Virus record (IMG/VR): IMGVR_UViG_3300025536_000010
Location: 1-64,000 of that record
Reading direction: 5' to 3' (one strand)
DNA length: 64,000 nucleotides
Shown: in pieces, positions 40,036 through 51,525 of the stretch
Layout: each line of letters opens with the position of its first letter
How positions within the stretch are numbered: position 1 is the stretch's first letter
The notes under the pieces: model-generated
Seen by the model: the letters and a program-made list of their open reading frames with translations, nothing else
Told to the model about the DNA's origin: nothing
Database searches by the model: none
Made by a program: the position numbers and the translations under genes

Positions 40036-40097
40036 CTTAGCTATTAGGTAGACTCGCATTTGATTCAGAGATGTCTCAAAGGCCAGGGAGGGCTACC

Positions 40098-40895
40098 ATG
40101 CCACGGCAGGCACTGTGCGTCGGCGTCAACTACGCCAACACCGAGTTCGAGCTGCGCGGCTGCGTCAACGACGCGAACGACTGGGCGCAGTTTTTCGACA
40201 AGCGCGGCTTCTCCACGTCCGTCCTGACCGAGAACCAGGCGACCCGCCAGAACATGCTCGCGGCGATGGAGAGCCTGGTGCGGCAACTGCAACCGGGTGA
40301 GATCGGGGCGATCCAGTTCAGCGGCCACGGCACCTGGCTGCCCGACCGAGACGGGGACGAACCGGATGGCCGAGACGAGGCCCTGGTGCCGCACGACGTC
40401 ACCGACGACGGCCGCGGCCTCATCATCGACGACGAGTTGCGTGTTATCTTCGGCCGGCTCCGCGAGGGCGCACGGCTCCTGTGGATCTCGGACTGCTGCC
40501 ACTCGGGTACGGCTTTCCGCTTCTTCGGCAACGGTGCCTCCAAACGCCGCGTACGCTTCTTGCCGCCGTCTCACTTCCTGGTCGATACCGGCCTGGTGCG
40601 TCGCATGGAGCGGGCCTACGGTCAACCGCCCAAGCGGACCAACGCAGCTCTACCTGGCGTTCTCCACCTTTCGGGCTGCCGCGATCACGAGTACAGCGCC
40701 GACGCCGAGATCGACGGCCGGTTCAGCGGGGCGTTATCCTACTACGCTTTGCTGGCGTTCAAGCAGGTAGTCCAGCAGAAGGGCACCTACCAGGACGTCC
40801 ACAAACTCGTCCGCCAGTACCTGCCCAGTTGGGACTTCCAGCAGACCCCGCAGCTGAATGGCGCGACGGCCTTGAAACGGACGCCGCTGTTCTAG
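40098..40895 (+). CDS. Metacaspase (peptidase C14)
   Basis: ALCVGVNY, LRGCVNDA, FSGHG (His), DGRDEALVP, SDCCHSG (Cys). Confidence 0.92.
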   Translation: MPRQALCVGVNYANTEFELRGCVNDANDWAQFFDKRGFSTSVLTENQATRQNMLAAMESLVRQLQPGEIGAIQFSGHGTWLPDRDGDEPDGRDEALVPHDVTDDGRGLIIDDELRVIFGRLREGARLLWISDCCHSGTAFRFFGNGASKRRVRFLPPSHFLVDTGLVRRMERAYGQPPKRTNAALPGVLHLSGCRDHEYSADAEIDGRFSGALSYYALLAFKQVVQQKGTYQDVHKLVRQYLPSWDFQQTPQLNGATALKRTPLF

Positions 40896-40928
40896 TACAC
40901 TCAGACCGTCTTGCCTCCTCTGTTCCAG

Positions 40929-40969
40929 CCTCGTCAGTGGGTCCGCCCCGCTGGCGAGGTTTTTCTTTG
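40929..40969 (+). terminator. Intrinsic terminator
   Basis: 13-bp stem CCTCGTCAGTGGG/CCCGCTGGCGAGG followed by TTTTTTCTTT. Confidence 0.8.
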
Positions 40970-41047
40970 CGCCGGGCTAAATAAGCGGTAGGGTTGTGTC
41001 ACAATAAATGATGGGAATCCCTACCCTTTTATCCTGGAGAGCGCTAC

Positions 41048-41296
41048 ATGCCCGGCATCCTACTCTTCGTGGCCAGCAACGATGCCCCCAAGCCTAACAG
41101 GCGCTGCAAGCGCTGCTGCTGTCAGATCGACAAGGGGCTGTTCCTGTGCCTGTCTTGTGAGGAGGTCGTGGCCTACTGGAGTCAGCTGGGCGAGTGTCCT
41201 AACTGCACAGGTCACATCAACCAGGCACGCAAAAGTAAGTTTTGCCCGCACTGCGGCGTGCCTCTGCGTAACCCCAAACCGCGGAAGAAGCAGTAA
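41048..41296 (+). CDS. Zn-ribbon protein
   Basis: Multiple CxxC pairs. Confidence 0.6.
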   Translation: MPGILLFVASNDAPKPNRRCKRCCCQIDKGLFLCLSCEEVVAYWSQLGECPNCTGHINQARKSKFCPHCGVPLRNPKPRKKQ

Positions 41297-41332
41297 CTTT
41301 TCCCTGTTCCGTGTTCCCGAAAGGAGCGGTCG

Positions 41333-42340
41333 ATGTTTGACAACATGAGGCGCGTTCTGTGCGCGACCCACGACGGCATCTTCCACGCAGATGACGTTGT
41401 GTCTTTTGCCTTGTTGACGCTGCTGCACAGGTTTCTGCCGGGCTTCCCCACGCCGCAGCTAACCCGCACCCGCGACCCGAAAGTGCTGGGCGAGCAGCAC
41501 ATCGTTTTCGACGTCGGCGGGGAATATGAAGTCGTCCGCGCGCACAACGTCTACCGTCTCGATCATCATCAGCGCGGCGGCGCCGGGTTGCGGCCTAACG
41601 GCGTACCCTACGCCGCAGCGGGGCTGATGTGGAAGACGTTCGGCCTCGAACTCTGTGGGGCAATGGCTGCGGAGCACGCCCTGTCCGTGCTGCACGACAA
41701 CGCCGTGTTCGAGAAGTTCGATCAGCAGTTCATTCAGCCGATTGACGCGAACGACTGCGGCTTCGAGATGGCCAGGGACTGGGAAGTACCGACGCTGCGC
41801 CCGCTTACGCTCAGCAGCATCATCTCTGGGTTCAACCCACGTTGGGATGAGGACATGTCGGCCGCCGAATCGCTGCGCAGGTTTGGCGCGGCAGCACAGG
41901 TGGCGCGTACGAGCATCGAACACGCGCTGGGCGGCATGCTGGCGGCGAAGAAGGCTGCGGACATCGTCCGCGACAGCGACCGCGTTTTCGCTGACAAGGT
42001 ACTGGCGCTTGGGCGTTTTTGTCCGTGGACCGAAGCCGTCCTGGAGAACGTAACCATGACCGACATCTTGTACGTCGTCTACAAACAGCCGGGCGAGGGG
42101 CAGCCGACCTGGATGGTTCAGTGCGTGCCGTGCTCGCTGGGCTCGTTCAGCAAGCGGAAGGCCCTGCCCGAGCCGTGGGCTGGGCTCCGCAGCAAGGAGG
42201 AGACGAAGGGCGACGGCCCGACCATCGAGGCCGTCAGCGGTGTCGCGGACGCCGTTTTCTGTCATCCAGGCCGCTTTATCTGCGGTGCGAAGTCCAAGGC
42301 CGGCGCTCTCAAGCTCGCTGAGATCGCGGTTATGACGTAA
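41333..42340 (+). CDS. MYG1-family (DHH-like) exonuclease
   Basis: THDGIFHADD, FDVGG, DHHQ, AAGLMWK, IDANDCG, FCHPGRF. Confidence 0.9.
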   Translation: MFDNMRRVLCATHDGIFHADDVVSFALLTLLHRFLPGFPTPQLTRTRDPKVLGEQHIVFDVGGEYEVVRAHNVYRLDHHQRGGAGLRPNGVPYAAAGLMWKTFGLELCGAMAAEHALSVLHDNAVFEKFDQQFIQPIDANDCGFEMARDWEVPTLRPLTLSSIISGFNPRWDEDMSAAESLRRFGAAAQVARTSIEHALGGMLAAKKAADIVRDSDRVFADKVLALGRFCPWTEAVLENVTMTDILYVVYKQPGEGQPTWMVQCVPCSLGSFSKRKALPEPWAGLRSKEETKGDGPTIEAVSGVADAVFCHPGRFICGAKSKAGALKLAEIAVMT

Positions 42341-42379
42341 CCTGCACGAGCCACCCCACCTGCTACGGGGACCGGCTCG

Positions 42380-42434
42380 GCAGGCAGACAACGAGGCGCT
42401 TCATGCGCCCTTAGTTGTCTGCCTGCTTTTCTTT
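42380..42434 (+). terminator. Intrinsic terminator
   Basis: GCAGGCAGACAAC/GTTGTCTGCCTGC perfect 13 bp plus inner stem, followed by TTTTCTTT. Confidence 0.8.
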
Positions 42435-42497
42435 ACCCATCACCCGGATTTGAGTACCATCGAAGTAGTGACCACCCCACTTCCTATGGAGATCCCG

Positions 42498-43124
42498 ATG
42501 GTCATGGAACGACCGCTACGGGAGTTTTTGGCGGCAGTCGACAGTCGGAAGCCATTCGCACTGAGCCGCTGGGGGGAGCACGAATGGCACTGCATCTTCG
42601 GCGAGCGAAACGGCTTCATTCCGCCAGACGGGCACGGGTATTTCCCGGCCCTCTGCCGCGACCTGACGGCCGTGCTGCATAGTCGACCAGATTACCGCCT
42701 GGGTATCCCTGCCGAAGCCTACAGCGACCGGGTGCGCAGCTATATCGACGGCTGCGCTCTGGACGATCTGGATTGGCAAGTCGACGTCCTCAAACTCACA
42801 CACGTCGATCAACTGTTAGGGCTGGTCGGGGCCGTATCGCGCGTGCCCCTGTTGGTGGTCGGCCCGCCGCGCCTGCGTAAGTCAAAAGCGCTCCTGCGCT
42901 GGCGGGCCTTCGTAGACGTGCCGCCGCGGAACTCGTACTTGTGCCGCGACGACATAGTTCGTAACGTGTTGGCTGCTTTGGAGGACTTCAAGGTGCCCGC
43001 TCTGGTATCGGTATCGGCCGGTGTCACGGCACCGCTAATCATCAACGACCTCGCCCGTCGTCCCGGAGGCTGCCGGCATCAGCTGGTCGACTTCGGCTCG
43101 CTCTGGGAGTCCTTCGGCGGCTAA
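42498..43124 (+). CDS. GT-D fold (DUF1792-like) glycosyltransferase-like protein
   Basis: KPFALSRWGEHE, LLVVGP, VSAG..A..II, LVDFGS. Confidence 0.55.
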   Translation: MVMERPLREFLAAVDSRKPFALSRWGEHEWHCIFGERNGFIPPDGHGYFPALCRDLTAVLHSRPDYRLGIPAEAYSDRVRSYIDGCALDDLDWQVDVLKLTHVDQLLGLVGAVSRVPLLVVGPPRLRKSKALLRWRAFVDVPPRNSYLCRDDIVRNVLAALEDFKVPALVSVSAGVTAPLIINDLARRPGGCRHQLVDFGSLWESFGG

Positions 43125-43141
43125 GCAAGGAGGTGTGCGTA

Positions 43142-43324
43142 ATGACCGATCAAGTCCCGCTGGCGGACGTGATTAACCTACTCTGGCGACAGGGACAGAA
43201 ACGGGTCGAGAACAACCAAGCGAAGACCAAGGACGGGGCGGCCGAGCCGACGTGGCCCACGCCCGCCGACCCACCAACCGTTATCACCCGGCCGGAGCAT
43301 CGCCCAAAGGTGCAAGGCACATGA
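43142..43324 (+). CDS. Small hypothetical protein
   Basis: RBS AAGGAGG. Confidence 0.55.
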   Translation: MTDQVPLADVINLLWRQGQKRVENNQAKTKDGAAEPTWPTPADPPTVITRPEHRPKVQGT

Positions 43325-43632
43325 ACGACAGGAAGTTCAAAAAGTCGCTGGCCAACCCGAACTCTTACGGGAACCGGAAGGCCGCGAAGAAGGCCGCCAA
43401 GCAGGACGCGAAACGGGAGAAGAAGGAGCTTCGCAAAACCTACCCCGGGTGGTTCAAGGTAACCGGCCAGGCCATCTGCGGGTGTTGCGAGGCCGTCCTC
43501 TACTACGAAACCCGCGCTCGGGCCGAGGCCGCGTGCAAGAAAGTCACCAACAAGCACGCGCTCATGGTAGACGACGCCGGGAACGAAGAGATGGTGGACG
43601 GCTTTTACGGTTTCACAGTGGAGCAAGTATGA
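43321..43632 (+). CDS. Basic hypothetical protein
   Basis: ATGA overlap; Lys-rich; CGCC motif. Confidence 0.6.
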   Translation: MNDRKFKKSLANPNSYGNRKAAKKAAKQDAKREKKELRKTYPGWFKVTGQAICGCCEAVLYYETRARAEAACKKVTNKHALMVDDAGNEEMVDGFYGFTVEQV

Positions 43633-44279
43633 GCAAGATTATCGTCGCCCTGGACGGCATGACCTGGAGCAAGAGCCTGCACATGGCCATGCAACTCAAG
43701 GAGTGCGTCTGGGGGTTCAAGCTGAACGACCTCCTGCTGGAGTATGGCGTCAGCGCCGTCCGGGAGTTCAAAAAAGTCGGGCCGGTCATGGCCGACCCCA
43801 AACTCCACGATATTCCCAACACGGTCGGTAACGGCGTCCGCCGGCTGCACGCGGCCGGTGCCGACCTCATCACGGTCCATGCCTCCGGCGGCCTGGACAT
43901 GCTCACCAACGCGGTTGCCCTGGCCGGCGAGGCGAAGATCCTGGCGGTCACCGTACTGACCAGCCTGAACGACCACGGCTGCGAGTACAGCTACGGCGGC
44001 AACGTCCGCAACACGGTTCGCCGGTTTATGGACCTGGCCAACCGCGCCGGCGTCGCAGGCGTAGTCTGCTCGCCGCAGGAGGAAGACCTGGCCGCCGAGG
44101 TGCCGAATCTCATCAAGGTAGTCCCCGGCATCCGCCTACCCGATCAGCGCGTCGACGACCAGGCACGCACCGGGCTGCCGAAGTGGGCCAACTACGTCGT
44201 GGTTGGTCGACCCATCACGCAGGCCGCGGACCCCATCGCCGCGGCGCACGAGATCAACAAGGCCCTGGAGGCAGCATGA
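43629..44279 (+). CDS. pyrF: Orotidine-5'-phosphate decarboxylase
   Basis: IVALD, DPKLHDIPNT signature, TVHASGG, AVTVLTS, VVCS, VPGIR, VVGRPIT. Confidence 0.95.
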   Translation: MSKIIVALDGMTWSKSLHMAMQLKECVWGFKLNDLLLEYGVSAVREFKKVGPVMADPKLHDIPNTVGNGVRRLHAAGADLITVHASGGLDMLTNAVALAGEAKILAVTVLTSLNDHGCEYSYGGNVRNTVRRFMDLANRAGVAGVVCSPQEEDLAAEVPNLIKVVPGIRLPDQRVDDQARTGLPKWANYVVVGRPITQAADPIAAAHEINKALEAA

Positions 44280-45460
44280 AGAAGCTCGACCCAGACACCC
44301 TGCCGGAGACGTTCGAGATCCCGGCCATGTTCGATGCCCACGTTCACTTCCGCGAACGCGAGGCGCTTTACGTCCTGGTCCCGCAAACCGCCCGGGTGTG
44401 CGACCGCGCGCTGGTGATGCCCAACACCAGCACGCCCATTACCGATGGCAGGCTCGCCAAGACCTACCGCGAGTGCATCGTGCAGGTTGCCGAGGAGGCC
44501 GGCTTCCCGGACTTCAACCCGCTGATGACGCTCTACCTGGAACCGGACACGCCTTACCGAACGATCCAGGAGGCCGTCCGGCTGTGCGGTAAGCACCTGG
44601 CCGGCGTGAAAATCTACCCCAAGGGCGGCACGACCAACAGCGACAAGGGCATCCCTATCGACTGGCTGTACAAGCCTGGCGTGCAGGACCACGTCAACTC
44701 GATGCCGCCCTGGCTCCGCGATACCTTGAAAGCCATCGCGGGCGAGGGCCTGGTACTCAACGTCCACGGCGAAGACCCCGAACAGGAACTGCTCGAACGC
44801 GAAGGTAAGTTCATGTGGTCGGGGTTCGCCGAGTGGTATCTGGAGACGCACAAGGGAGCCCGCCTGGTCCTGGAGCATGTATCAACCGACTCGGGCTTGG
44901 ACCTGGTTGACCGTCTGGCCAAGAAAGGGCACCAGATCGCGGCGTCTCTAACGCTGCACCACTGCTACGACACTGTCGACAACGCTTATCGACAGTGCCA
45001 CAACTGCTGCTGGCCGCCGCCGAACTACCGCCGACATCGGGACGCGGTGCGGGCCAAGGCCCAGTGCGCCTTTACGGTCAACCCCACAGACGCGCTCGTG
45101 TTCCTGGGGAGCGATACGGCCGCGCACACGGTCGCGTCCAAAGAGCGAGCCGTTTGTGCCTGCGGCGACTATACGGCGCCGCTGCTGGCCGAGAAGTTGG
45201 CTGAGATGTTCGCCGAGCCGTCGTGGATCGACATGGGCCGGACGCTGCCGTCGCATGAGCGGCGGATGACCGTGTTCACCAGCACCAATGCCGCGGCGTT
45301 CTACAACGTCGAGGGCTCAGGACGGAAAATCCACCTGGTCAAGCGCCCGTGGACCGTACCACAACGGATGCACGGCGTCGTGCCGTGGCAAGCAGGCAAG
45401 GAAGTGCTGTATCGCGTGGAAGGAGAACCGCGATGGCTCAAGACGGGGGACTGGTTATGA
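44276..45460 (+). CDS. pyrC: Dihydroorotase (type II)
   Basis: DAHVHFR, VMPN, VKIYPKGGTTNS, VHGE, EHVST, GSDTAAH. Confidence 0.92.
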   Translation: MKKLDPDTLPETFEIPAMFDAHVHFREREALYVLVPQTARVCDRALVMPNTSTPITDGRLAKTYRECIVQVAEEAGFPDFNPLMTLYLEPDTPYRTIQEAVRLCGKHLAGVKIYPKGGTTNSDKGIPIDWLYKPGVQDHVNSMPPWLRDTLKAIAGEGLVLNVHGEDPEQELLEREGKFMWSGFAEWYLETHKGARLVLEHVSTDSGLDLVDRLAKKGHQIAASLTLHHCYDTVDNAYRQCHNCCWPPPNYRRHRDAVRAKAQCAFTVNPTDALVFLGSDTAAHTVASKERAVCACGDYTAPLLAEKLAEMFAEPSWIDMGRTLPSHERRMTVFTSTNAAAFYNVEGSGRKIHLVKRPWTVPQRMHGVVPWQAGKEVLYRVEGEPRWLKTGDWL

Positions 45461-45804
45461 AAGCCGTCCAGGACGAACTCGACAAGGGCATGGCGCGTCT
45501 GTTGAGTGATGCCGGCATCGACCCGGAAGACCGCGACATGGTCAGTGAGGCCGCTGCGGCTTTGCGGGAGTACGAGCGGCGGGAGGCGTACTGGGGGCAG
45601 TTCGCTGGGCGGGCGCAGCCAATGCCGGACATCACCAAGCTAACGACGGACATAAAACAGCTGTGCCAGCGCCTGTCTGCGGTGCTCGGTGTCACCCTAC
45701 CGCGGAACCCGTTTTTCGACACGCAACTGGGCGAGTCCCACGTTCCAAAAAACGGCTTTGAGGAGTGCGATACCCCCGTTGTTGTGACCGTGGAAAAATC
45801 TTGA
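45457..45804 (+). CDS. Hypothetical protein
   Basis: ATGA overlap. Confidence 0.6.
   Translation: MKAVQDELDKGMARLLSDAGIDPEDRDMVSEAAAALREYERREAYWGQFAGRAQPMPDITKLTTDIKQLCQRLSAVLGVTLPRNPFFDTQLGESHVPKNGFEECDTPVVVTVEKS
45745..45762 (-). repeat. Dispersed motif copy inside CDS (reverse orientation)
   Basis: Reverse complement CTCAAAGCCGTTTTTTGG. Confidence 0.5.
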
Positions 45805-45823
45805 AAATCTTTGAACCCGGTGC

Positions 45824-45852
45824 TTGACAGGGGTCAAACCCTGGCATAACCT
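45824..45852 (+). promoter_or_regulatory. Sigma70 promoter
   Basis: TTGACA-N17-TAACCT with AT-rich upstream tract. Confidence 0.75.
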
Positions 45853-45891
45853 ATCATCTGGTGCGACTGACTGGGCGACGGTTGCGCCGGA

Positions 45892-46050
45892 CAGGCCGGC
45901 AGCGACTGGCACCGGGAAAGATAGCTCAACCTGACGGTAGCGGCCACCGTGCCGTGGGGCGACCTCAAAAATCGAACCACGAACGCGGAGGACGCCGCCG
46001 GTAGGCTGGGCCTTCTGGAACGGTGTCCGTCGCTGCCGGCCTGCTCTTTT
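45892..46050 (+). ncRNA. Candidate rod-shaped RNA (6S-like architecture)
   Basis: Perfect 15-bp closing stem 45892-45906/46029-46043, extended by nested imperfect stems to an apical loop near 45960-45972; followed by CTCTTTT. Confidence 0.5.
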
Positions 46051-46065
46051 GCGCCCGGAGCAAAC

Positions 46066-46992
46066 ATGGAAGACTTCCTCAAGCATCTCGCCTGGGTTGG
46101 ACCCCTGGCGGTCATGGCCCTTGTGGGCCTCCTGGCGGCTCTACGCCGCGTCATTGAGCGGAAGAAGGCCCAGAAGCCTACCTTGCCGCCCGAGAGGCTT
46201 AGGCAGCCTCCCAGAGCCATTTCCAAGCAGCCTGTCGATTACGACGCCCCGCCTTTCCCGCCGGCCGAACTGAGGACCGAGGAACGGCCCGGGGAGCGCC
46301 GCCGCCTGACCAAGGAAGAGGCTGCGATCCACGACGCCATGACAGTAGCAACCAAGGCCGCTGACGCTGGCGAGCCGGCTGAGCGCTTTATGGTTCCGAT
46401 CACCGGCCCCCAGGCCGGCAGCGTCGTCCAGCTGGGCAAGACCGAGTACATCGAGAAGCCTGTGGAGGGTGAGCGAGACGCCAGGGCAGACGTGCAGATG
46501 CCTGGCGATCTCGAACAGAAGCCCATCGACGACGGCAGCAGTTCGGCGATGCGGTACGCTCGCCGTCAGGGGCGCATCGGTGAGGACGGCAGTGTCGACC
46601 ACGGTGGCGGCGTCACGTCACACCCGCTGCGGCCTGGCGAGGTGACGGAGCGCATCGACGGCTACCAGCAGTACCTGGCCAAGCTGAACACCAAGGCCGA
46701 TGCAGCCTTCGCGGAAGAGTTGGTCATGATTAAACGGGACGCCGAGTGCCTGGCCCGCCACAAGTTCCTGACGCCCGAACGCAAAGCGCAGCTGCTTGCC
46801 CAGGAGCGGATCGAAGCGCCAGAGGAACACCGCGACCCCAGGCCCGACGACGAGGTTATCGAAGCGTTCGTGGCTCACTGTGTCCAGGCAGCCGTCGACC
46901 AGGCCAAAGGCATCTATGCTTCGCCCAACCCCGACCTCTTGAAGAAAGTCACGCCTGAGCGGATCAGGTCTGGGCAGTTTTTCTCGCACTGA
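46066..46992 (+). CDS. Membrane-anchored hypothetical protein
   Basis: RBS GGAG; TM helix LAWVGPLAVMALVGLLAAL followed by basic residues. Confidence 0.7.
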   Translation: MEDFLKHLAWVGPLAVMALVGLLAALRRVIERKKAQKPTLPPERLRQPPRAISKQPVDYDAPPFPPAELRTEERPGERRRLTKEEAAIHDAMTVATKAADAGEPAERFMVPITGPQAGSVVQLGKTEYIEKPVEGERDARADVQMPGDLEQKPIDDGSSSAMRYARRQGRIGEDGSVDHGGGVTSHPLRPGEVTERIDGYQQYLAKLNTKADAAFAEELVMIKRDAECLARHKFLTPERKAQLLAQERIEAPEEHRDPRPDDEVIEAFVAHCVQAAVDQAKGIYASPNPDLLKKVTPERIRSGQFFSH

Positions 46993-47042: not shown

Positions 47043-47057
47043 CGCAATCGGGTTTGC

Positions 47058-47284
47058 GTTTTGTCCCCCATTCGAGTATATTTGGCCGCAGTCCAATATC
47101 TCGACACACGCGGTACGGAAGCCTCGGTCGAGCCGCATGGCAATGAGGCTGTGCGTCGGTTGGAGCCGCTAACGAAGTCCTTTTCGGACTCAGGCCCGTT
47201 CCCGACGCTCTCTACTTCCAATGCTGCGCCTACACGGTCGCCGTGCAGGCTTTGCTCGGCTTCCGCCGCATGGGAGGACAAAGC
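47058..47284 (+). promoter_or_regulatory. Multi-stem structured leader that pairs with the RBS of the downstream GT2 gene
   Basis: GTTTTGTCCCCCA (47058-70) pairs with TGGGAGGACAAAGC (47271-84); inner stems CGGAAGCC/GGCTTCCG and GCGTCGG/CCGACGC. Confidence 0.5.
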
Positions 47285-47285
47285 A

Positions 47286-48353
47286 ATGGCTGACGGGCAG
47301 CGTATCGCTGGTACAGCGCGCATCCCCGTTGCAGAGATGGCCAAAGACAATCTGCAACACATTTTCCCCCACCTTACGCCCGAACAGATCGAGGCGATGA
47401 AAGCCGGCAAGCCGGTCCCGCCGTCGCCGGATTGGCAAGGCAGTACGACAGCGCCAGTCTCCAGCGGTGCAGCGTGCGAGATCCCGCGTCGGCAAGAGCC
47501 AGAAGCCGCTCAGGTCGACCTGACGGGCTTGCCGGCTCCGGTTATCGCGGAGAACGAGCACCTGCCGCTGGTGACCTGCATTCTCGTTTTTGGCATCCGC
47601 GAGCGGTTGCGGATGGCGCGCAAGGCGGTCAACCAGTTCGTCCGTCAGCATTACCCGCGCAAGCAGTTGGTGATCGTCAACACCACCGACCTCGACGTCA
47701 CCAACCGGCCGCACCCGGCGATCAAGGAGCGCAAGGTCTTCACCGGGCAAAAGCTGCCGACCGGACAGATGCGCAACCAGGGCATGGACCTGGCGGACGG
47801 CGACTGGATCGTGCCTTGCTGGGACGATGACGACTACTACGATCCCTGGCGGCTCGTCTACCAGATGTGTCTCCGGCGTCCCGGGCACGCGGTCCTGCTG
47901 ACGAACCAGATCCGCGTCCACATCGACAGCACTACGGCGTTCATGCACCACCAGGCCGAGGGCATCCCGAACACGATGCTCGTCCCGAACCTGCCCGAGA
48001 CGCGCTTCGACGAGGAGGCGCAGATCGGCGAAGACCTGGCGTTCTGGATGAAGCACTACGGCGTCAAAACGGTCATCGCCAACAACGTCGAGTTCCCGCT
48101 CAATCATCTCTCGATGGCCGCCTACCACGGCCACAACATTACGCCGGTCGGCGAGTTCATGCGCGGCTATCACGGACCCGAGCACCAGGGGCACATTTAT
48201 CTGCCCCCGGAAGAGATCGACAACCTGCGCACTATCCTCAGCGACTTTGGCGTGCAACTGTCTACGACGCCTCCGGGGGAGGCGTCTGGCGACCAAGGTC
48301 CGGCAGGCTCGCCAGAGCCCGCTGAGACGAGCGAGGTCGCCATTCTCTCCTAG
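47286..48353 (+). CDS. Glycosyltransferase family 2 with N-terminal extension
   Basis: PLVTCIL, QHYPRKQLVIVN, RNQG..LADGDWI..WDDDDY. Confidence 0.8.
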   Translation: MADGQRIAGTARIPVAEMAKDNLQHIFPHLTPEQIEAMKAGKPVPPSPDWQGSTTAPVSSGAACEIPRRQEPEAAQVDLTGLPAPVIAENEHLPLVTCILVFGIRERLRMARKAVNQFVRQHYPRKQLVIVNTTDLDVTNRPHPAIKERKVFTGQKLPTGQMRNQGMDLADGDWIVPCWDDDDYYDPWRLVYQMCLRRPGHAVLLTNQIRVHIDSTTAFMHHQAEGIPNTMLVPNLPETRFDEEAQIGEDLAFWMKHYGVKTVIANNVEFPLNHLSMAAYHGHNITPVGEFMRGYHGPEHQGHIYLPPEEIDNLRTILSDFGVQLSTTPPGEASGDQGPAGSPEPAETSEVAILS

Positions 48354-48380
48354 TCCGTCCCAGTGGCAGAAAGGGCAGGT

Positions 48381-49178
48381 ATGAGCATCGTGGCGCAAAG
48401 CCAGGGCGTCCTGAACTTCGTCGTTACGGGTGAGATCAGGAGCGGCGCCTCCGTCGTGCAATCGAGTATCGACGGACGAGCCGACTGTGTCTGCCATGCA
48501 GACCTGTTCCACCCGGACGACGCCGTGCGGCGAGAAGCCCATGAGGGCTACTTCGGCCCCAGCAAAGACCCGGAACGGATGCCCGAGTGGTTCAAGGATG
48601 GCGAGACGGTGCCTTTCCAGTACATCAACCACGCGGTACTGGACAACCCCATGCAAGGAGAATGCGCAGTCGGTTTCAAAGTTTTGTACCCGGCTGTGCG
48701 CAGGTGGGAACTGTTTGAGTTGTTTGAAGAACGGTGCCGAGAAGGTGATTTCTGTTTGGTGCATGTCGCTCGAAACCCGGTGGCCTGTTTCGTAAGTCTC
48801 AAGCAGGCCGAGCAGTCTGGTGTGTGGGCGCGGGGCTGGAACAGCTTGCGGCAAACAAGCTGCCCCAGCGCCGTCACCGTGGATGCAGGCGAGTTGATAG
48901 CGTTCTGTCGCAACCACGCCTCTCTCTACGGCAAAATCCGTGCCGCATGTAAGGACTCCTTGGAAATCTCCTACCGGGACGTACTGCTCGACTACCAGGA
49001 CACCATGCGGAAGGTGTTTAAGTTCCTGGAACTCCCCGAGTCCGACGAGCCAGCCGTGCCCGGCTGCCGCCGGCTCAAGAACCGGGACATATTGGCAAGG
49101 ATCGCTAACCTGAACCGGCTGCGCAGCGAGGTGCCTTCGGACATCCGCGCGCTGCTGGACGACGAGGAGTTACTCTGA
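48381..49178 (+). CDS. Sulfotransferase (Stf0-like)
   Basis: FVVTGEIRSGAS (5'-PSB loop), VGFKVLY, HVARNPVACFVS (3'-PB), ISYRD. Confidence 0.75.
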   Translation: MSIVAQSQGVLNFVVTGEIRSGASVVQSSIDGRADCVCHADLFHPDDAVRREAHEGYFGPSKDPERMPEWFKDGETVPFQYINHAVLDNPMQGECAVGFKVLYPAVRRWELFELFEERCREGDFCLVHVARNPVACFVSLKQAEQSGVWARGWNSLRQTSCPSAVTVDAGELIAFCRNHASLYGKIRAACKDSLEISYRDVLLDYQDTMRKVFKFLELPESDEPAVPGCRRLKNRDILARIANLNRLRSEVPSDIRALLDDEELL

Positions 49179-49705
49179 TGCGCCGCAACCGCGCGCTGTG
49201 GTGGTCTATCGTTTCCCTGGTCGCCGGCATCGCCACCAGCATTGCGCTAGTGGCGGTGGTGACGCACCCGGAACCCAGACCACCGGCCGCGGCGCAGCGC
49301 AGCGAACTGCCGCACGTCGAACAGGGCACAGAACCGGCCGCAGCCGGTCCCCGGCGTATGCCGGTGGCCGGGGCGCCGGGATACTGGGTCGTGGTCAACA
49401 CGGACGGTTCGAGCTATCTGGAAGGACCGGACGGTCAGCGCACAGCGCTGGCCGCTGCCGGCCCTTCGGTCCCGGAGCAGCGCGTCGCCGACGCCATCGC
49501 TAAACGACTTGCCAAGACCCCCGAGAAACGTAAGGGCCTGGGCCAGTTGGTGGTGTGCGATAGTGGCGTGGTGGATGTGCCGAAAGACGCCATCATCACG
49601 TTCGTCGGTGTCGACAAAGTCGTCACCCTCGATCCGAACGATGGTTCTTCGACGGCCCACTACGTCGATGGTCGCGTGCAGCGCCGGGAGCGTGTGGAGC
49701 GTTAG
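49178..49705 (+). CDS. Membrane-anchored hypothetical protein
   Basis: N-terminal TM helix; TGATG coupling. Confidence 0.65.
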   Translation: MRRNRALWWSIVSLVAGIATSIALVAVVTHPEPRPPAAAQRSELPHVEQGTEPAAAGPRRMPVAGAPGYWVVVNTDGSSYLEGPDGQRTALAAAGPSVPEQRVADAIAKRLAKTPEKRKGLGQLVVCDSGVVDVPKDAIITFVGVDKVVTLDPNDGSSTAHYVDGRVQRRERVER

Positions 49706-49762
49706 GTCACGGTGGCCTAATGCTGCGCGATGCAAGGAATATCCCTGGAAGGAGTGCTCTCC

Positions 49763-50317
49763 ATGTCCCTTAGCACGGTTGCTGCGATCATCGTCCAGAC
49801 CCCGAAGGTGTTCAGCTGGCTGGGTCACATGCCCGTCATGACCTGGTCCCTCAACCAACTGCTCGAAGTCCGCGGCGTCGACCGGATCGTCTGCGTCGCG
49901 GTCCCCGATCTTGCTGCCCGCGCCGGGCGGATACTGGTCAAGGACGAGATCGAGGTGACCACCATCCCCGACAACGTGAAAGACCAGACCACGCTGCACA
50001 AATGGTTGTGCGCTGCCAACGGTCCCGCGGCCACGGCTGACGTCCTGGTTGCCATCAAGCCGACCGCGCCGTTTTTGCCCTCCGCCAAGATCGAGGCGTG
50101 CCTGCACAAGGTCAAGCGCTGCAAGAACTGCGATCATTGCACGCTGCACCGCTACGCCACTGTTGACAGCCTCCAAGTCTTTAAGGTACAGGCAGTGATC
50201 GAATCCGTGGCGCTCCAGCGGGCCGCGGTGCCGGTGAGTCTGATCGAGTCGCTCGACGTCACCGACCCCGAAGGGCTCCGCGTGGCCACCGCCCTGGTCG
50301 TTAGCGGCACGGCTTGA
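49763..50317 (+). CDS. Cytidylyltransferase-like (NeuA/KdsB fold), degenerate
   Basis: LGHMPVMTWS, VDRIV, KPTAPFL..IEAC, ESLDVTDPEG; the canonical N-terminal ARxGSK loop is absent. Confidence 0.6.
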   Translation: MSLSTVAAIIVQTPKVFSWLGHMPVMTWSLNQLLEVRGVDRIVCVAVPDLAARAGRILVKDEIEVTTIPDNVKDQTTLHKWLCAANGPAATADVLVAIKPTAPFLPSAKIEACLHKVKRCKNCDHCTLHRYATVDSLQVFKVQAVIESVALQRAAVPVSLIESLDVTDPEGLRVATALVVSGTA

Positions 50318-50356
50318 CCGTTTCCCCGGAAGCCAGCATTCAGGAAGGATAGCTCA

Positions 50357-51277
50357 ATGGCCGAACTACCGCTCGTCTCTTGCCTGTGCGCCAGCAGCCC
50401 CAAACGGTGGGCGCAGTTGCAGCGGGCCATCCTGGACTTCACCAGGCAGACCTACCCGAACAAGGAACTCATCATCGGCGTTGACCTGCGCACAGACTTC
50501 GCCGGCATGATCGAATTGTTCGTGGAAGACGCGCTGGCCAGCGTGCCGCCGACGCGCGTGCATGATGGCGAGCGGATCATCCGCGACCTGCCCTACCGGA
50601 TCAAAGTGTTCGGCCGCCCCAACAGTAACTCGCCGATGGACTGCCTGATCCAGGCGCTCTGTCACGCCCGCGGCGACATCGTTGCCCTTTGGGACGACGA
50701 TAACCTCAACCTGCCGAGCCGCTTGACGGATCAGGTGGTTCGGCAGCAACGGCACCAGGATACACTCACGGCGCTCTCGGAATGCCTGTACTACTTCCAC
50801 GAGAGCAAAGAGTTGTTCGTGGTGAACCACGAAAACCCGGAGGCCGAGGTCAGCGAGCGCATCGCTATCTCGTCGCTCATGAGCCCGCGCGACGCGCTGC
50901 CAGCGTTGGAGCCGCACTATCGAACCAACCCAGCGTTGCACTTGGTCAACGGCCTCCAGGCGCGCAACCGCAAACTGCTGGGCATCACCGGCAAGCCGTT
51001 TCACCACCTAGTCGGCGTGTCGGGCGACAACCTGCGCGGCTACAGCGACCATCGTAAAATCGCGCAGGGTCACTCGCGTTCGGCGGACTGGATCAATGAG
51101 CGCGCGGATGCGCTTGTTGAAGCGCTGAACCAGTATTACTGGGACGCGGACAAAGTGAACGTCGTGGGCGCGGATGCCCTGGCGTTTGAGTACACCCCCA
51201 AGCTACGACATTCCAAAGACCTCTACGAAATCGCTATCAAGGACGCCGAAGCCGAAGAGGTCGTCAGAGAGGATTGA
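50357..51277 (+). CDS. Glycosyltransferase family 2
   Basis: PLVSCL, QTYPNKELII, ARGDIVALWDDD...RL..Q. Confidence 0.8.
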   Translation: MAELPLVSCLCASSPKRWAQLQRAILDFTRQTYPNKELIIGVDLRTDFAGMIELFVEDALASVPPTRVHDGERIIRDLPYRIKVFGRPNSNSPMDCLIQALCHARGDIVALWDDDNLNLPSRLTDQVVRQQRHQDTLTALSECLYYFHESKELFVVNHENPEAEVSERIAISSLMSPRDALPALEPHYRTNPALHLVNGLQARNRKLLGITGKPFHHLVGVSGDNLRGYSDHRKIAQGHSRSADWINERADALVEALNQYYWDADKVNVVGADALAFEYTPKLRHSKDLYEIAIKDAEAEEVVRED

Positions 51278-51312
51278 CCATGCCAATGATCGCTGTCCAA
51301 GGAGGGACACGA

Positions 51313-51525
51313 ATGAGCGCTCCCACCAATCTGAGCGAGCGCGAGCGGGACGTCCTGCACGGTATCGTGGAGGACAAAACCTACCGAGAGATCGCGGCCG
51401 GCATGGGCGTCTCTACCGAGACGGTGAAAACCTATGCCAACCGCCTCCGGCGCAAGCTCGGCATCAACAGCAAGACGGGGCTGGCTTTGTGGGCCGCCTC
51501 ACACCTAGACGCCTATGGGTTTTGA
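51313..51525 (+). CDS. Stand-alone LuxR-type HTH regulator
   Basis: LSERERDVL..TYREIA..MGVSTETVKTY..RLRRKLG. Confidence 0.9.
   Translation: MSAPTNLSERERDVLHGIVEDKTYREIAAGMGVSTETVKTYANRLRRKLGINSKTGLALWAASHLDAYGF

What the first reader, a model, noticed from the sequence alone, without database searches (positions are those of the whole stretch)
45824..46050. Promoter-driven rod-shaped RNA, candidate 6S-like RNA polymerase decoy
Seen: the best sigma70 promoter in the window, followed by about 150 nt folding into one long hairpin. It has a 15-bp perfect stem, a 7-bp extension, a purine-rich asymmetric bubble (GGAAAGATA / CTTCTGGAA), further stems and a short T-tract. Established: 6S RNA is a rod of about 180 nt with a central bubble that sequesters sigma70-RNAP. 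Inference: a 6S-like or otherwise new early sRNA; alternatively a structured 5' UTR of the 46066 gene.
Basis: partly seen in the sequence, partly recalled or inferred. Interest (0 to 1): 0.6.

Follow-up and report, generated by a model that had tools for sequence, protein, structure and literature searches.

The report
Conserved phage promoter-hairpin-terminator RNA module
The long hairpin is real, but it is not a 6S-like decoy: it is the overgrown terminator stem of a short promoter-driven RNA whose conserved part is a small 5' hairpin with an invariant loop, a motif absent from Rfam that related jumbo phages and bacterial-looking metagenome contigs share.

Summary
The window is the first 64 kb of a 234,886-bp jumbo phage from a subsurface metagenome.

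**Observation.** The promoter-like site, the roughly 150-nt hairpin and the short T-tract are all present. The fold is far beyond chance (z -7.45).

**6S reading.** It fails on three counts:
- No Rfam 6S match.
- The largest internal loop is a symmetric 4x4 GGAA/GGAA, not an open bubble.
- The rod ranges from 26 to 193 nt in relatives.

**What relatives show.** An exhaustive HMMER search found remote homologues of the downstream "ORFan". Eight syntenic phage loci carry the same module:
- A sigma70-type promoter (TTGAC, 17 nt, TAnnnT).
- At the predicted transcript start, a 10-bp hairpin with an invariant 9-nt loop (A-N-Y-GGGCGA). It has strong covariation and many G.U pairs, so it is a + strand RNA.
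- A G+C-rich terminator hairpin of variable length with compensatory changes.
- A short U-tract, then the ribosome binding site and the gene.

**Beyond the phages.** The 5' hairpin also occurs in at least eight unrelated metagenome contigs. There it is the apex of stand-alone promoter-hairpin-U-tract units in differing gene neighbourhoods.

**Best reading.** It is a small terminated RNA of about 190 nt that acts through the invariant loop. Its leaky terminator also gates the downstream membrane-protein gene. The partner is unknown and no expression data exist.

The parts
45824..45852 (+). Sigma70-type promoter: -35 TTGACA (45824-45829), 17-nt spacer, -10 TAACCT (45847-45852). Inferred transcript start about 45856-45861.
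   Evidence: Conserved in 8 loci as TTGAC(n)/TTGnTC, a constant spacer of about 17 nt and TAnnnT, while the spacer sequence varies (A4). The start site is inferred, not mapped.
45857..45891 (+). Hairpin 1: 13 bp in this phage. The conserved 10-bp core is 45860-45869 / 45879-45888. The invariant 9-nt loop ACTGGGCGA is at 45870-45878.
   Evidence: RNA + strand -19.3 kcal/mol against -6.3 for the - strand. It has 4 G.U pairs. Covariation: 91% of cells paired against 78% shuffled, and score 0.486 against 0.260, 0 of 500 shuffles for each (A8). Single copy in the genome.
45892..46043 (+). Hairpin 2, the 'rod': a 152-nt imperfect hairpin. Lower stem of 15 + 7 bp, then a symmetric GGAA/GGAA loop. The upper part is lineage-specific. 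It is the terminator stem.
   Evidence: -99.7 kcal/mol. Gapless arms. Lower-stem covariation: 14 of 32 pairs have changes on both sides among 4 sequences (A6). The homologous position holds a canonical 10-bp terminator hairpin in L038-L040.
46044..46051 (+). U-tract CTCTTTTG directly after the stem. Inferred 3' end of the short RNA near 46050.
   Evidence: A U-rich tract follows hairpin 2 in all 9 loci. It is comparable with the tails of the genome's canonical terminators, such as TTCTTTTG and TGTCTTTG.
46057..46068 (+). Ribosome binding site GGAG (46057-46060) and start codon ATG (46066-46068) of the downstream gene.
   Evidence: The site stays mostly unpaired in folds.
46066..46992 (+). Gene for a 308-aa protein with an N-terminal membrane anchor and a conserved C-terminal helical domain, function unknown. 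It is the gene gated by the module.
   Evidence: No Pfam or PHROG match. Only a self hit in the word-index search. Remote homologues were found by exhaustive HMMER (alignment A3). Synteny.
45828..45845 (.). Left outer arm of a dyad, inside the promoter spacer. It is complementary (16 of 18) to 46090-46107 and in exact register with the rod axis. Specific to this phage.
   Evidence: 0 of 20,000 random centres reach 16/18; the most dyad-symmetric place of the genome, 73/140, z about 6. Not conserved in relatives.
46090..46107 (.). Right outer arm of the dyad, in codons 9-14 of the downstream gene (conserved protein motif AWVGP).

Best explanation
The locus is a small RNA gene fused to the leader of the next gene.

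**Transcript.** Host-type sigma70 RNA polymerase starts at about 45857-45861. It transcribes a 5' hairpin whose invariant 9-nt loop (A-C-U-G-G-G-C-G-A, containing a YUNR-like CUGG turn) is the functional recognition element. It then meets a very stable G+C-rich hairpin followed by a short U-tract. Most transcripts end there, giving an RNA of about 190 nt.

**The rod.** The 152-nt rod is only the terminator and 3' stabiliser. It has grown long in this lineage.

**Downstream gene.** The fraction of polymerases that reads through, or polymerases arriving from upstream, supplies the mRNA of the membrane-protein gene at 46066. The same element therefore attenuates that gene.

**Partner.** The loop most likely contacts a conserved cellular partner, RNA or protein. 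The same hairpin exists as a stand-alone terminated RNA in bacterial-looking contigs.

**Shown:** the structure, its conservation, covariation, strand, and its position between a conserved promoter and a terminator.

**Inferred:** the transcript ends, termination efficiency, action in trans, and the partner.
For: - Fold statistics.
- The promoter is conserved at the -35, the spacing and the three key -10 positions in 8 loci whose spacers differ (A4).
- Hairpin 1 covaries, and many of its cells are G.U (19 of 81 in the nine phage loci, A5), so it folds only as + strand RNA.
- Hairpin 2 keeps its place and pairing through complete sequence turnover. In L038-L040 it is a textbook intrinsic terminator with UUUGCCUUU-type tails.
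- Over six rods, G.U mismatches outnumber A.C by 40 to 15.
- The U-tract resembles those of the genome's other terminators.
- A metagenome scan for the hairpin-1 core found at least 8 further distinct contigs (L043, L045, L046, L047, L049/L062, L055, L058, L067). There the hairpin is the apex of a longer stem that ends in a U-run and is preceded by TTGnnn-16/17-TAnnnT. The gene contexts differ: upstream of truD twice, convergent with a DUF1552 gene, and beside an HTH_17 gene.
- Stem positions outside the search pattern covary.
- The covariance model separates members (34-51 bits) from pattern-only hits (30 bits or less).
Against: - No RNA data exist. The only public run that holds the sequence is DNA.
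- In this phage the U-tract is short and begins with CUC, so termination may be weak.
- In the phage clade the module always sits directly before the same gene, which fits a purely cis-acting leader equally well. Two bacterial copies also precede one gene family (truD).
- No partner or target was identified.
- The motif was not found in 151 sampled genomes of one phylum, nor convincingly in 401 of another. Its bacterial hosts are unknown.
- One relative (L037) has the gene without the module.
Confidence: 0.5

Rival explanations
1. A purely cis-acting regulated attenuator of the nut/put or RAT type. Hairpin 1 is the docking site for a phage or host factor, or for RNA polymerase itself. That factor makes the polymerase read through hairpin 2 and so times expression of the membrane protein. 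The short RNA is only a by-product.
For: - The module is always immediately upstream of the same gene in 8 of 9 phage loci. The ribosome binding site is 8-26 nt after the U-tract, with no room for another promoter.
- The hairpin sits at the very 5' end, next to a terminator, as boxB and put elements do (own knowledge).
- Two bacterial copies lie about 45 nt upstream of truD in the same direction.
Against: - Bacterial copies such as L049/L062 are followed by a convergent gene, so they cannot be leaders.
- In the bacterial form the hairpin is nested inside the terminator stem, which leaves no alternative antiterminator fold.
- No Q-type antiterminator family was found in the genome.
- No conserved mutually exclusive pairing was seen.
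Confidence: 0.3
2. A 6S-like RNA that mimics open promoter DNA and sequesters host sigma70 RNA polymerase.
For: - The predicted size of about 190 nt and the overall rod shape fit.
- The phage encodes its own RNA polymerase beta and beta', so silencing the host enzyme would make sense.
Against: - No Rfam 6S hit at E<=10. The only hit is a sub-threshold plant microRNA-precursor hairpin on both strands.
- The largest internal loop is a symmetric 4x4 GGAA/GGAA.
- Rod length is 26-193 nt among relatives and the upper rod cannot be aligned.
Confidence: 0.03
3. A DNA-level element: a replication origin, cruciform, protein-binding dyad, or a decaying inverted duplication without RNA function.
For: - In this phage the rod arms are gapless, and G.U equals A.C (5 against 5-7).
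- The + and - strands fold about equally well (-99.7 against -94.9).
- An outer arm pair shares the same axis, making this the most dyad-symmetric 280 bp of the genome.
Against: - Hairpin 1 folds only on the + strand.
- Over six rods, G.U exceeds A.C by 40 to 15.
- The outer arms are not conserved.
- No GC-skew turn at 46 kb.
- No copies in other genomes by stem pattern.
- Segments between the arms are at chance complementarity (24%) while the arms are 72-89%. Neutral decay does not give that pattern.
Confidence: 0.05
4. An RNase III processing and mRNA-stability element. The 22-bp lower stem is cut by host RNase III, leaving hairpin-protected ends for the upstream and downstream messages, as at T7 early and lambda N-leader sites.
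For: - A 15 + 7 bp near-perfect helix is the right size for RNase III (own knowledge).
- Long rods are kept in four lineages.
Against: - Three relatives have only a 10-bp terminator hairpin, too short for RNase III. Processing cannot be the conserved function.
- It could be an added function in lineages with long rods.
Confidence: 0.1

Closest known systems
Lambda 6S RNA (the pR'-tR' transcript)
   Same: A constitutive sigma70 promoter gives a short terminated transcript of about 194 nt. Downstream genes are reached only by reading through its terminator. It has recently been seen as an Hfq-bound small RNA with targets, and it is unrelated to bacterial 6S RNA (bioRxiv 10.1101/2024.10.31.621285). 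The layout and predicted size are the same here.
   Different: - No sequence or structural similarity.
- No Q-type antiterminator family found in this genome.
- Here one gene, not a late operon, follows, and it has its own terminator and a new promoter after it.
- The 5' hairpin motif is shared with bacterial contigs.
Bacterial 6S RNA (ssrS; Rfam 6S families)
   Same: Size near 190 nt, mostly double-stranded rod, made from a sigma70 promoter.
   Different: No central open bubble, no Rfam match, and rod length not conserved.
Antitermination RNA sites: lambda nut boxB, HK022 put
   Same: A small hairpin with a sequence-specific loop placed just after an early promoter and before a terminator (own knowledge).
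   Different: - No boxA/boxB or put similarity.
- The terminator abuts the hairpin.
- Homologous hairpins in bacterial contigs are stand-alone units. No factor is known.
Antisense and small RNAs with YUNR recognition loops and intrinsic terminators (plasmid and phage control RNAs such as CopA or RNA I types, P1 c4)
   Same: Own promoter, a stem topped by a conserved loop that contains a YUNR-like turn, and a terminator hairpin as the 3' end (own knowledge). A c4-2 hit at 12.7 bits, E 7, is only on the terminator stem.
   Different: No complementary target found nearby, and no family match in Rfam 15.
Imperfect palindromic repeat elements (ERIC, Correia and other MITE-like elements)
   Same: Imperfect palindrome of 130-150 bp in an intergenic region, transcribed as a hairpin.
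   Different: Single copy in the genome. No copies found elsewhere by stem pattern. Homologous by position, not by mobility, in relatives.

Membership tests
Bacterial 6S RNA | Match to Rfam 6S covariance models | tested here: not met
   No hit at gathering score in 64 kb. None at E<=10 in 45600-46300.
Bacterial 6S RNA | Large central bubble flanked by closing and terminal stems (open-promoter mimic) | tested here: not met
   The largest internal loop is a symmetric 4x4 GGAA/GGAA. The other loops are 1-2 nt.
Bacterial 6S RNA | Conserved rod architecture and length among relatives | tested here: not met
   Hairpin 2 is 26-193 nt in nine loci, and its upper part cannot be aligned.
Bacterial 6S RNA | Binds sigma70 holoenzyme and templates product RNAs | not testable with these tools
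   Needs biochemistry.
Promoter-proximal terminated transcript (lambda 6S / pR'-tR' type) | Sigma70 promoter followed within about 200 nt by an intrinsic terminator, with genes directly behind it | tested here: met
   Promoter conserved. Terminator hairpin plus U-tract in all loci. Ribosome binding site 8-26 nt after the tract.
Promoter-proximal terminated transcript (lambda 6S / pR'-tR' type) | Q-family antiterminator encoded by the phage | tested here: not met
   PF06530 and PF03589 are absent from the 235-kb genome, and the controls rang. Divergent factors are not excluded.
   Window copy scores 48.8 bits, E 8e-10. Pair statistics.
Any Rfam 15 family | Match at the curated threshold in the window or in 16 related loci | tested here: not met
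   Only chance-level hits at E<=1-10.
MITE-like repeat | Several copies in a genome or in other genomes | tested here: not met
   Single copy. The pattern hits in species genomes are chance, sharing only the specified 13-mers.

The most novel reading that the evidence does not exclude
The invariant-loop hairpin is a previously undescribed class of small RNA shared by bacteria and a clade of jumbo phages. The phages captured the host's RNA module and express it early from a host-type promoter, in order to mimic, titrate or hijack the conserved cellular partner of that RNA. On this reading it is an RNA-level host-takeover device, with the downstream envelope-modification genes placed under the same switch.
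Probability: 0.25. Interest if true: 0.8.

Novelty: new variant of a known kind. Interest (0 to 1): 0.6.

Why it matters
- Small RNAs of jumbo phages are almost unexplored, and this clade has no cultured member.
- The analysis turns a single odd hairpin into a defined RNA motif with 17 non-identical members, covariation support and a calibrated model (R1). The motif is absent from Rfam 15.
- It occurs both in phages that carry their own RNA polymerase and in bacterial-looking contigs.
- An invariant 9-nt loop kept across such distance points to a conserved partner worth finding.
- It also shows that the eye-catching rod is an evolutionarily plastic terminator stem. That is a caution for reading long hairpins as 6S-like RNAs.

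Tried and rejected
**Searches that found no relatives**
- Nucleotide and protein searches of the phage collection with the locus and flanking proteins. The only result was a distant dihydroorotase-like match for the upstream 425-aa ORF.
- The search for related loci in viral contigs with both flanking proteins.
- Word-index protein searches with both flanking proteins, which gave self hits only.
- Two other assemblies of the same phage are identical over the locus, so they carry no comparative information.

**Pattern scans**
- Rod stems in viral contigs gave nothing. In species genomes they gave three chance hits.
- A first hairpin-1 pattern in viral contigs gave 21 hits, all false.

**Expression data**
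- The sequencing-run search found one DNA run, probably the source sample. Laying its contig showed no variants, joints or breaks.

**Ideas rejected**
- Origin of replication: no GC-skew feature at 46 kb.
- Conservation of the outer dyad arms: only this phage has them.
- tRNA or tmRNA: none in the window or in the bacterial-type loci.
- Leader peptide: a 1-nt length difference inside the conserved loop excludes a reading frame.
- Literature search for the core sequence found only unrelated primers.

**Distribution in genomes**
- Nothing in 151 genomes of the phylum of G003.
- In 401 genomes of the phylum of G001 there were 14 pattern hits. Those scored reached 28.5 bits or less, within the range of chance hits.
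- The remaining parts of the relatives' contigs could not be searched.
- The unpublished genome G154 was not used for any claim.

**The downstream protein**
- The protein atlas gave nothing for it.

Full report
**Setting**

The window is bases 1-64000 of a 234,886-bp virus record rated complete. It has 62% G+C, and about 256 of 260 predicted genes lie on the + strand. It comes from a subsurface metagenome.

The phage encodes its own RNA polymerase beta and split beta' (genome 66967-73787). It has no detectable relatives in the phage or viral-contig collections.

The finding lies in the 261-nt intergenic region 45805-46065. Upstream is a 123-aa gene of unknown function, preceded by pyrC-like, pyrF and MYG1-like genes. 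Downstream is a 308-aa gene at 46066-46992, whose product has an N-terminal membrane anchor.

**The observation**

Present as described:
- TTGACA, 17 nt, TAACCT at 45824-45852.
- A 152-nt imperfect hairpin at 45892-46043.
- CTCTTTTG at 46044-46051.

Supporting numbers:
- The fold of 45855-46065 has z -7.45.
- By an approximate sigma70 matrix the promoter is the best in the window. The six best + strand sites of the genome are all intergenic.
- The bare consensus match occurs about as often as chance predicts, and the tool's own scan omits it.

Corrections:
- The supposed asymmetric bubble is a symmetric GGAA/GGAA 4x4 loop.
- Nearly all internal loops are symmetric, because the arms form a gapless inverted repeat.

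Two things were missed:
- A separate hairpin at 45857-45891 with four G.U pairs. It folds on the + strand only (-19.3 against -6.3 kcal/mol).
- An outer inverted pair, 45828-45845 / 46090-46107 (16 of 18), on exactly the same axis as the rod. This makes the locus the most dyad-symmetric 280 bp of the genome.

**Is it 6S-like?**

No.
- Rfam gives nothing at curated thresholds in the window.
- At E<=10 it gives only a sub-threshold plant microRNA-precursor hairpin on both strands.
- There is no central bubble.

**Finding relatives**

Both flanking proteins looked like ORFans in the word-index search. Two other assemblies were identical over the locus.

The exhaustive HMMER search found nine remote homologues of the downstream protein, at 30-41% identity. 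A profile search added two more.

Their contigs are syntenic. The shared order is:
1. A caspase-like peptidase gene.
2. pyrF and pyrC-like genes.
3. A small ORF.
4. An intergenic region.
5. This gene.
6. Glycosyltransferase and sulfotransferase genes.
7. A small GerE / sigma70 region-4 protein.

Eight distinct loci (L008, L009, L010, L011, L015, L038, L039, L040) carry a homologous intergenic element. One locus (L037) has the gene directly after its neighbour, with no element.

**What is conserved**

1. **The promoter.** The -35 is TTGAC in six of eight loci and TTGnTC in two. The spacer is constant at about 17 nt but varies in sequence. The -10 is TAnnnT, with T1, A2 and T6 invariant (A4). 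This is phylogenetic support for a real sigma70-type promoter. The hairpin starts 6-9 nt after the -10, so it lies at the 5' end of the transcript (inferred).

2. **Hairpin 1.** It has a 9-10 bp stem and a loop A-N-Y-GGGCGA that never varies in its last six bases. In the nine phage loci, 91.4% of cells pair against 81.6% in shuffles. The covariation score is 0.509 against 0.319, with 0 of 500 shuffles reaching it. Slid controls pair at 26-51%. Nineteen of 81 cells are G.U, which excludes the - strand and duplex DNA as the selected form (A5).

3. **Hairpin 2.** It is always G+C-rich, it always abuts hairpin 1, and a U-rich tract always follows. Its length varies widely:
   - 26-42 nt in L038-L040, where it is a canonical terminator with a 10-bp GC stem, a 6-nt loop and a UUUGCCUUU-type tail.
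   - 50-63 nt in L008 and L015.
   - 141-193 nt in the window, L009, L010 and L011.

   The lower 21-24 bp covary, with 14 of 32 pairs changed on both sides among four sequences (A6). The upper rod cannot be aligned. Over six rods, G.U mismatches outnumber A.C by 40 to 15, again pointing to the + strand RNA. The window's own rod shows no such bias.

4. **The gene start.** The ribosome binding site and start codon follow 8-26 nt after the tract, which leaves no room for another promoter.

The outer dyad arms are significant only in the window (z -3.25, against about 0 in seven relatives). They remain unexplained.

**Beyond the phages**

I scanned metagenome contigs for the hairpin-1 core, with 18 plain bases specified. 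Besides the phage itself, this returned 27 loci.

About ten hits lie in coding sequence and look like chance.

At least eight distinct sequences (L043, L045, L046, L047, L049/L062, L055, L058, L067) show one common design:
- TTGnnn, 16-17 nt, TAnnnT.
- After about 7 nt (about 45 nt in L058), a longer stem whose apex is this hairpin.
- A run of 4-8 U.

Stem positions outside the search pattern covary. With 18 sequences, 91.1% of cells pair against 78.1% in shuffles. Twenty-eight cells have double changes against 11, and the score is 0.486 against 0.260, each with 0 of 500 shuffles reaching it (A8).

The covariance model R1 gives 34-51 bits to the sequences it was built from (self-scoring, so expected) and at most 30 bits to pattern-only hits. 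The phage genome has one copy.

The gene neighbourhoods differ: upstream of truD twice, convergent with a DUF1552 gene, and next to an HTH_17 gene. None of these loci, nor the phage loci, matches any Rfam 15 family.

The motif was not found in 151 sampled genomes of one phylum, nor convincingly in 401 of another. The bacterial carriers are therefore unidentified.

**Interpretation**

The conserved unit is a promoter, a 5' hairpin with an invariant loop, and an intrinsic terminator. That is the anatomy of a small RNA gene.

In this phage clade it is fused to the front of one gene. It must therefore also act as an attenuator of that gene, because nothing else can transcribe the gene from this side except read-through.

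The long rod that drew attention is a lineage-specific expansion of the terminator stem. It may have added roles, for example as an RNase III substrate, but it is not the conserved functional part.

I favour a short RNA that acts through its loop on a conserved partner (0.5) over a purely cis-acting, factor-dependent antitermination site (0.3). Two points decide this. The bacterial copies are self-contained units in varied contexts. In them the hairpin is nested in the terminator, which leaves no alternative fold.

The closest known layout is lambda's pR'-tR' '6S' transcript. It is about 194 nt, is read through by Q with NusA, and has now been seen as a small RNA with targets. No Q-type protein is found here.

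None of the transcript ends, the termination efficiency or the partner has been shown. No RNA data exist for this uncultured phage.

**Verdict**

The 6S-like decoy reading is rejected. The result is a new, covariation-supported RNA motif in a known kind of arrangement.

Noticed in passing
window 3079, 7663, 24747, 39968, 52052 (and genome 76189, 94023, 109671, 154841, 180044, 189500): A motif of about 18 nt, cTAAAAGCCAnTTTTGAG, lies 20-60 nt before start codons. It often follows an intrinsic terminator directly. It is a candidate phage-specific promoter, perhaps for the phage's own RNA polymerase (RNAP).
   Followed up: partly
window 47043-47285: After the 308-aa gene come a terminator (47043-47058) and a second sigma70-like promoter (-35 at 47054-47059, -10 at 47077-47082). 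Its spacer, GTCCCCC-N6-7-G, is conserved in all eight relatives. A long, strongly folded 5' UTR follows, before the glycosyltransferase gene.
   Followed up: partly
window 45828-45845 and 46090-46107: An 18-nt inverted pair (16 of 18) joins the promoter spacer to codons 9-14 of the gene, exactly on the rod's symmetry axis. It is unique in the genome and absent from relatives. In read-through transcripts it would close a three-way junction.
   Followed up: yes
window 45957-45963: A second copy of GGGCGAC lies near the apex of the rod. The apical regions of the long rods of the window, L009 and L010 share GGGCGR...CGAAC.
   Followed up: no
window 40071-45460: A jumbo phage carrying a caspase-like peptidase C14, a MYG1-family exonuclease, an OMP decarboxylase (pyrF) and a dihydroorotase-like gene in a row. 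The block is syntenic in relatives.
   Followed up: partly
window 47061-51525: A conserved cluster of glycosyltransferase, sulfotransferase and unknown genes. It ends with a 70-aa protein made only of a GerE / sigma70 region-4 helix-turn-helix (about 51313-51525). That protein could read -35-like DNA.
   Followed up: no
whole record against ENA contig (L003): A second assembly of the same phage (234,608 bp) breaks at a different point and runs in the opposite direction. This fits a circular or circularly permuted genome, although the record is classed as linear.
   Followed up: no
genome 93851-94020 (outside the window): Three consecutive long, perfect hairpins (stems of 14-20 bp) form the most stable 170-nt stretch found in the sliding fold. 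The TAAAAGCC motif follows directly.
   Followed up: no
L055 and L058 (metagenome contigs): In two different bacterial-type contigs the hairpin-motif RNA lies about 45 nt upstream of a truD (tRNA pseudouridine synthase D) gene, on the same strand.
   Followed up: partly
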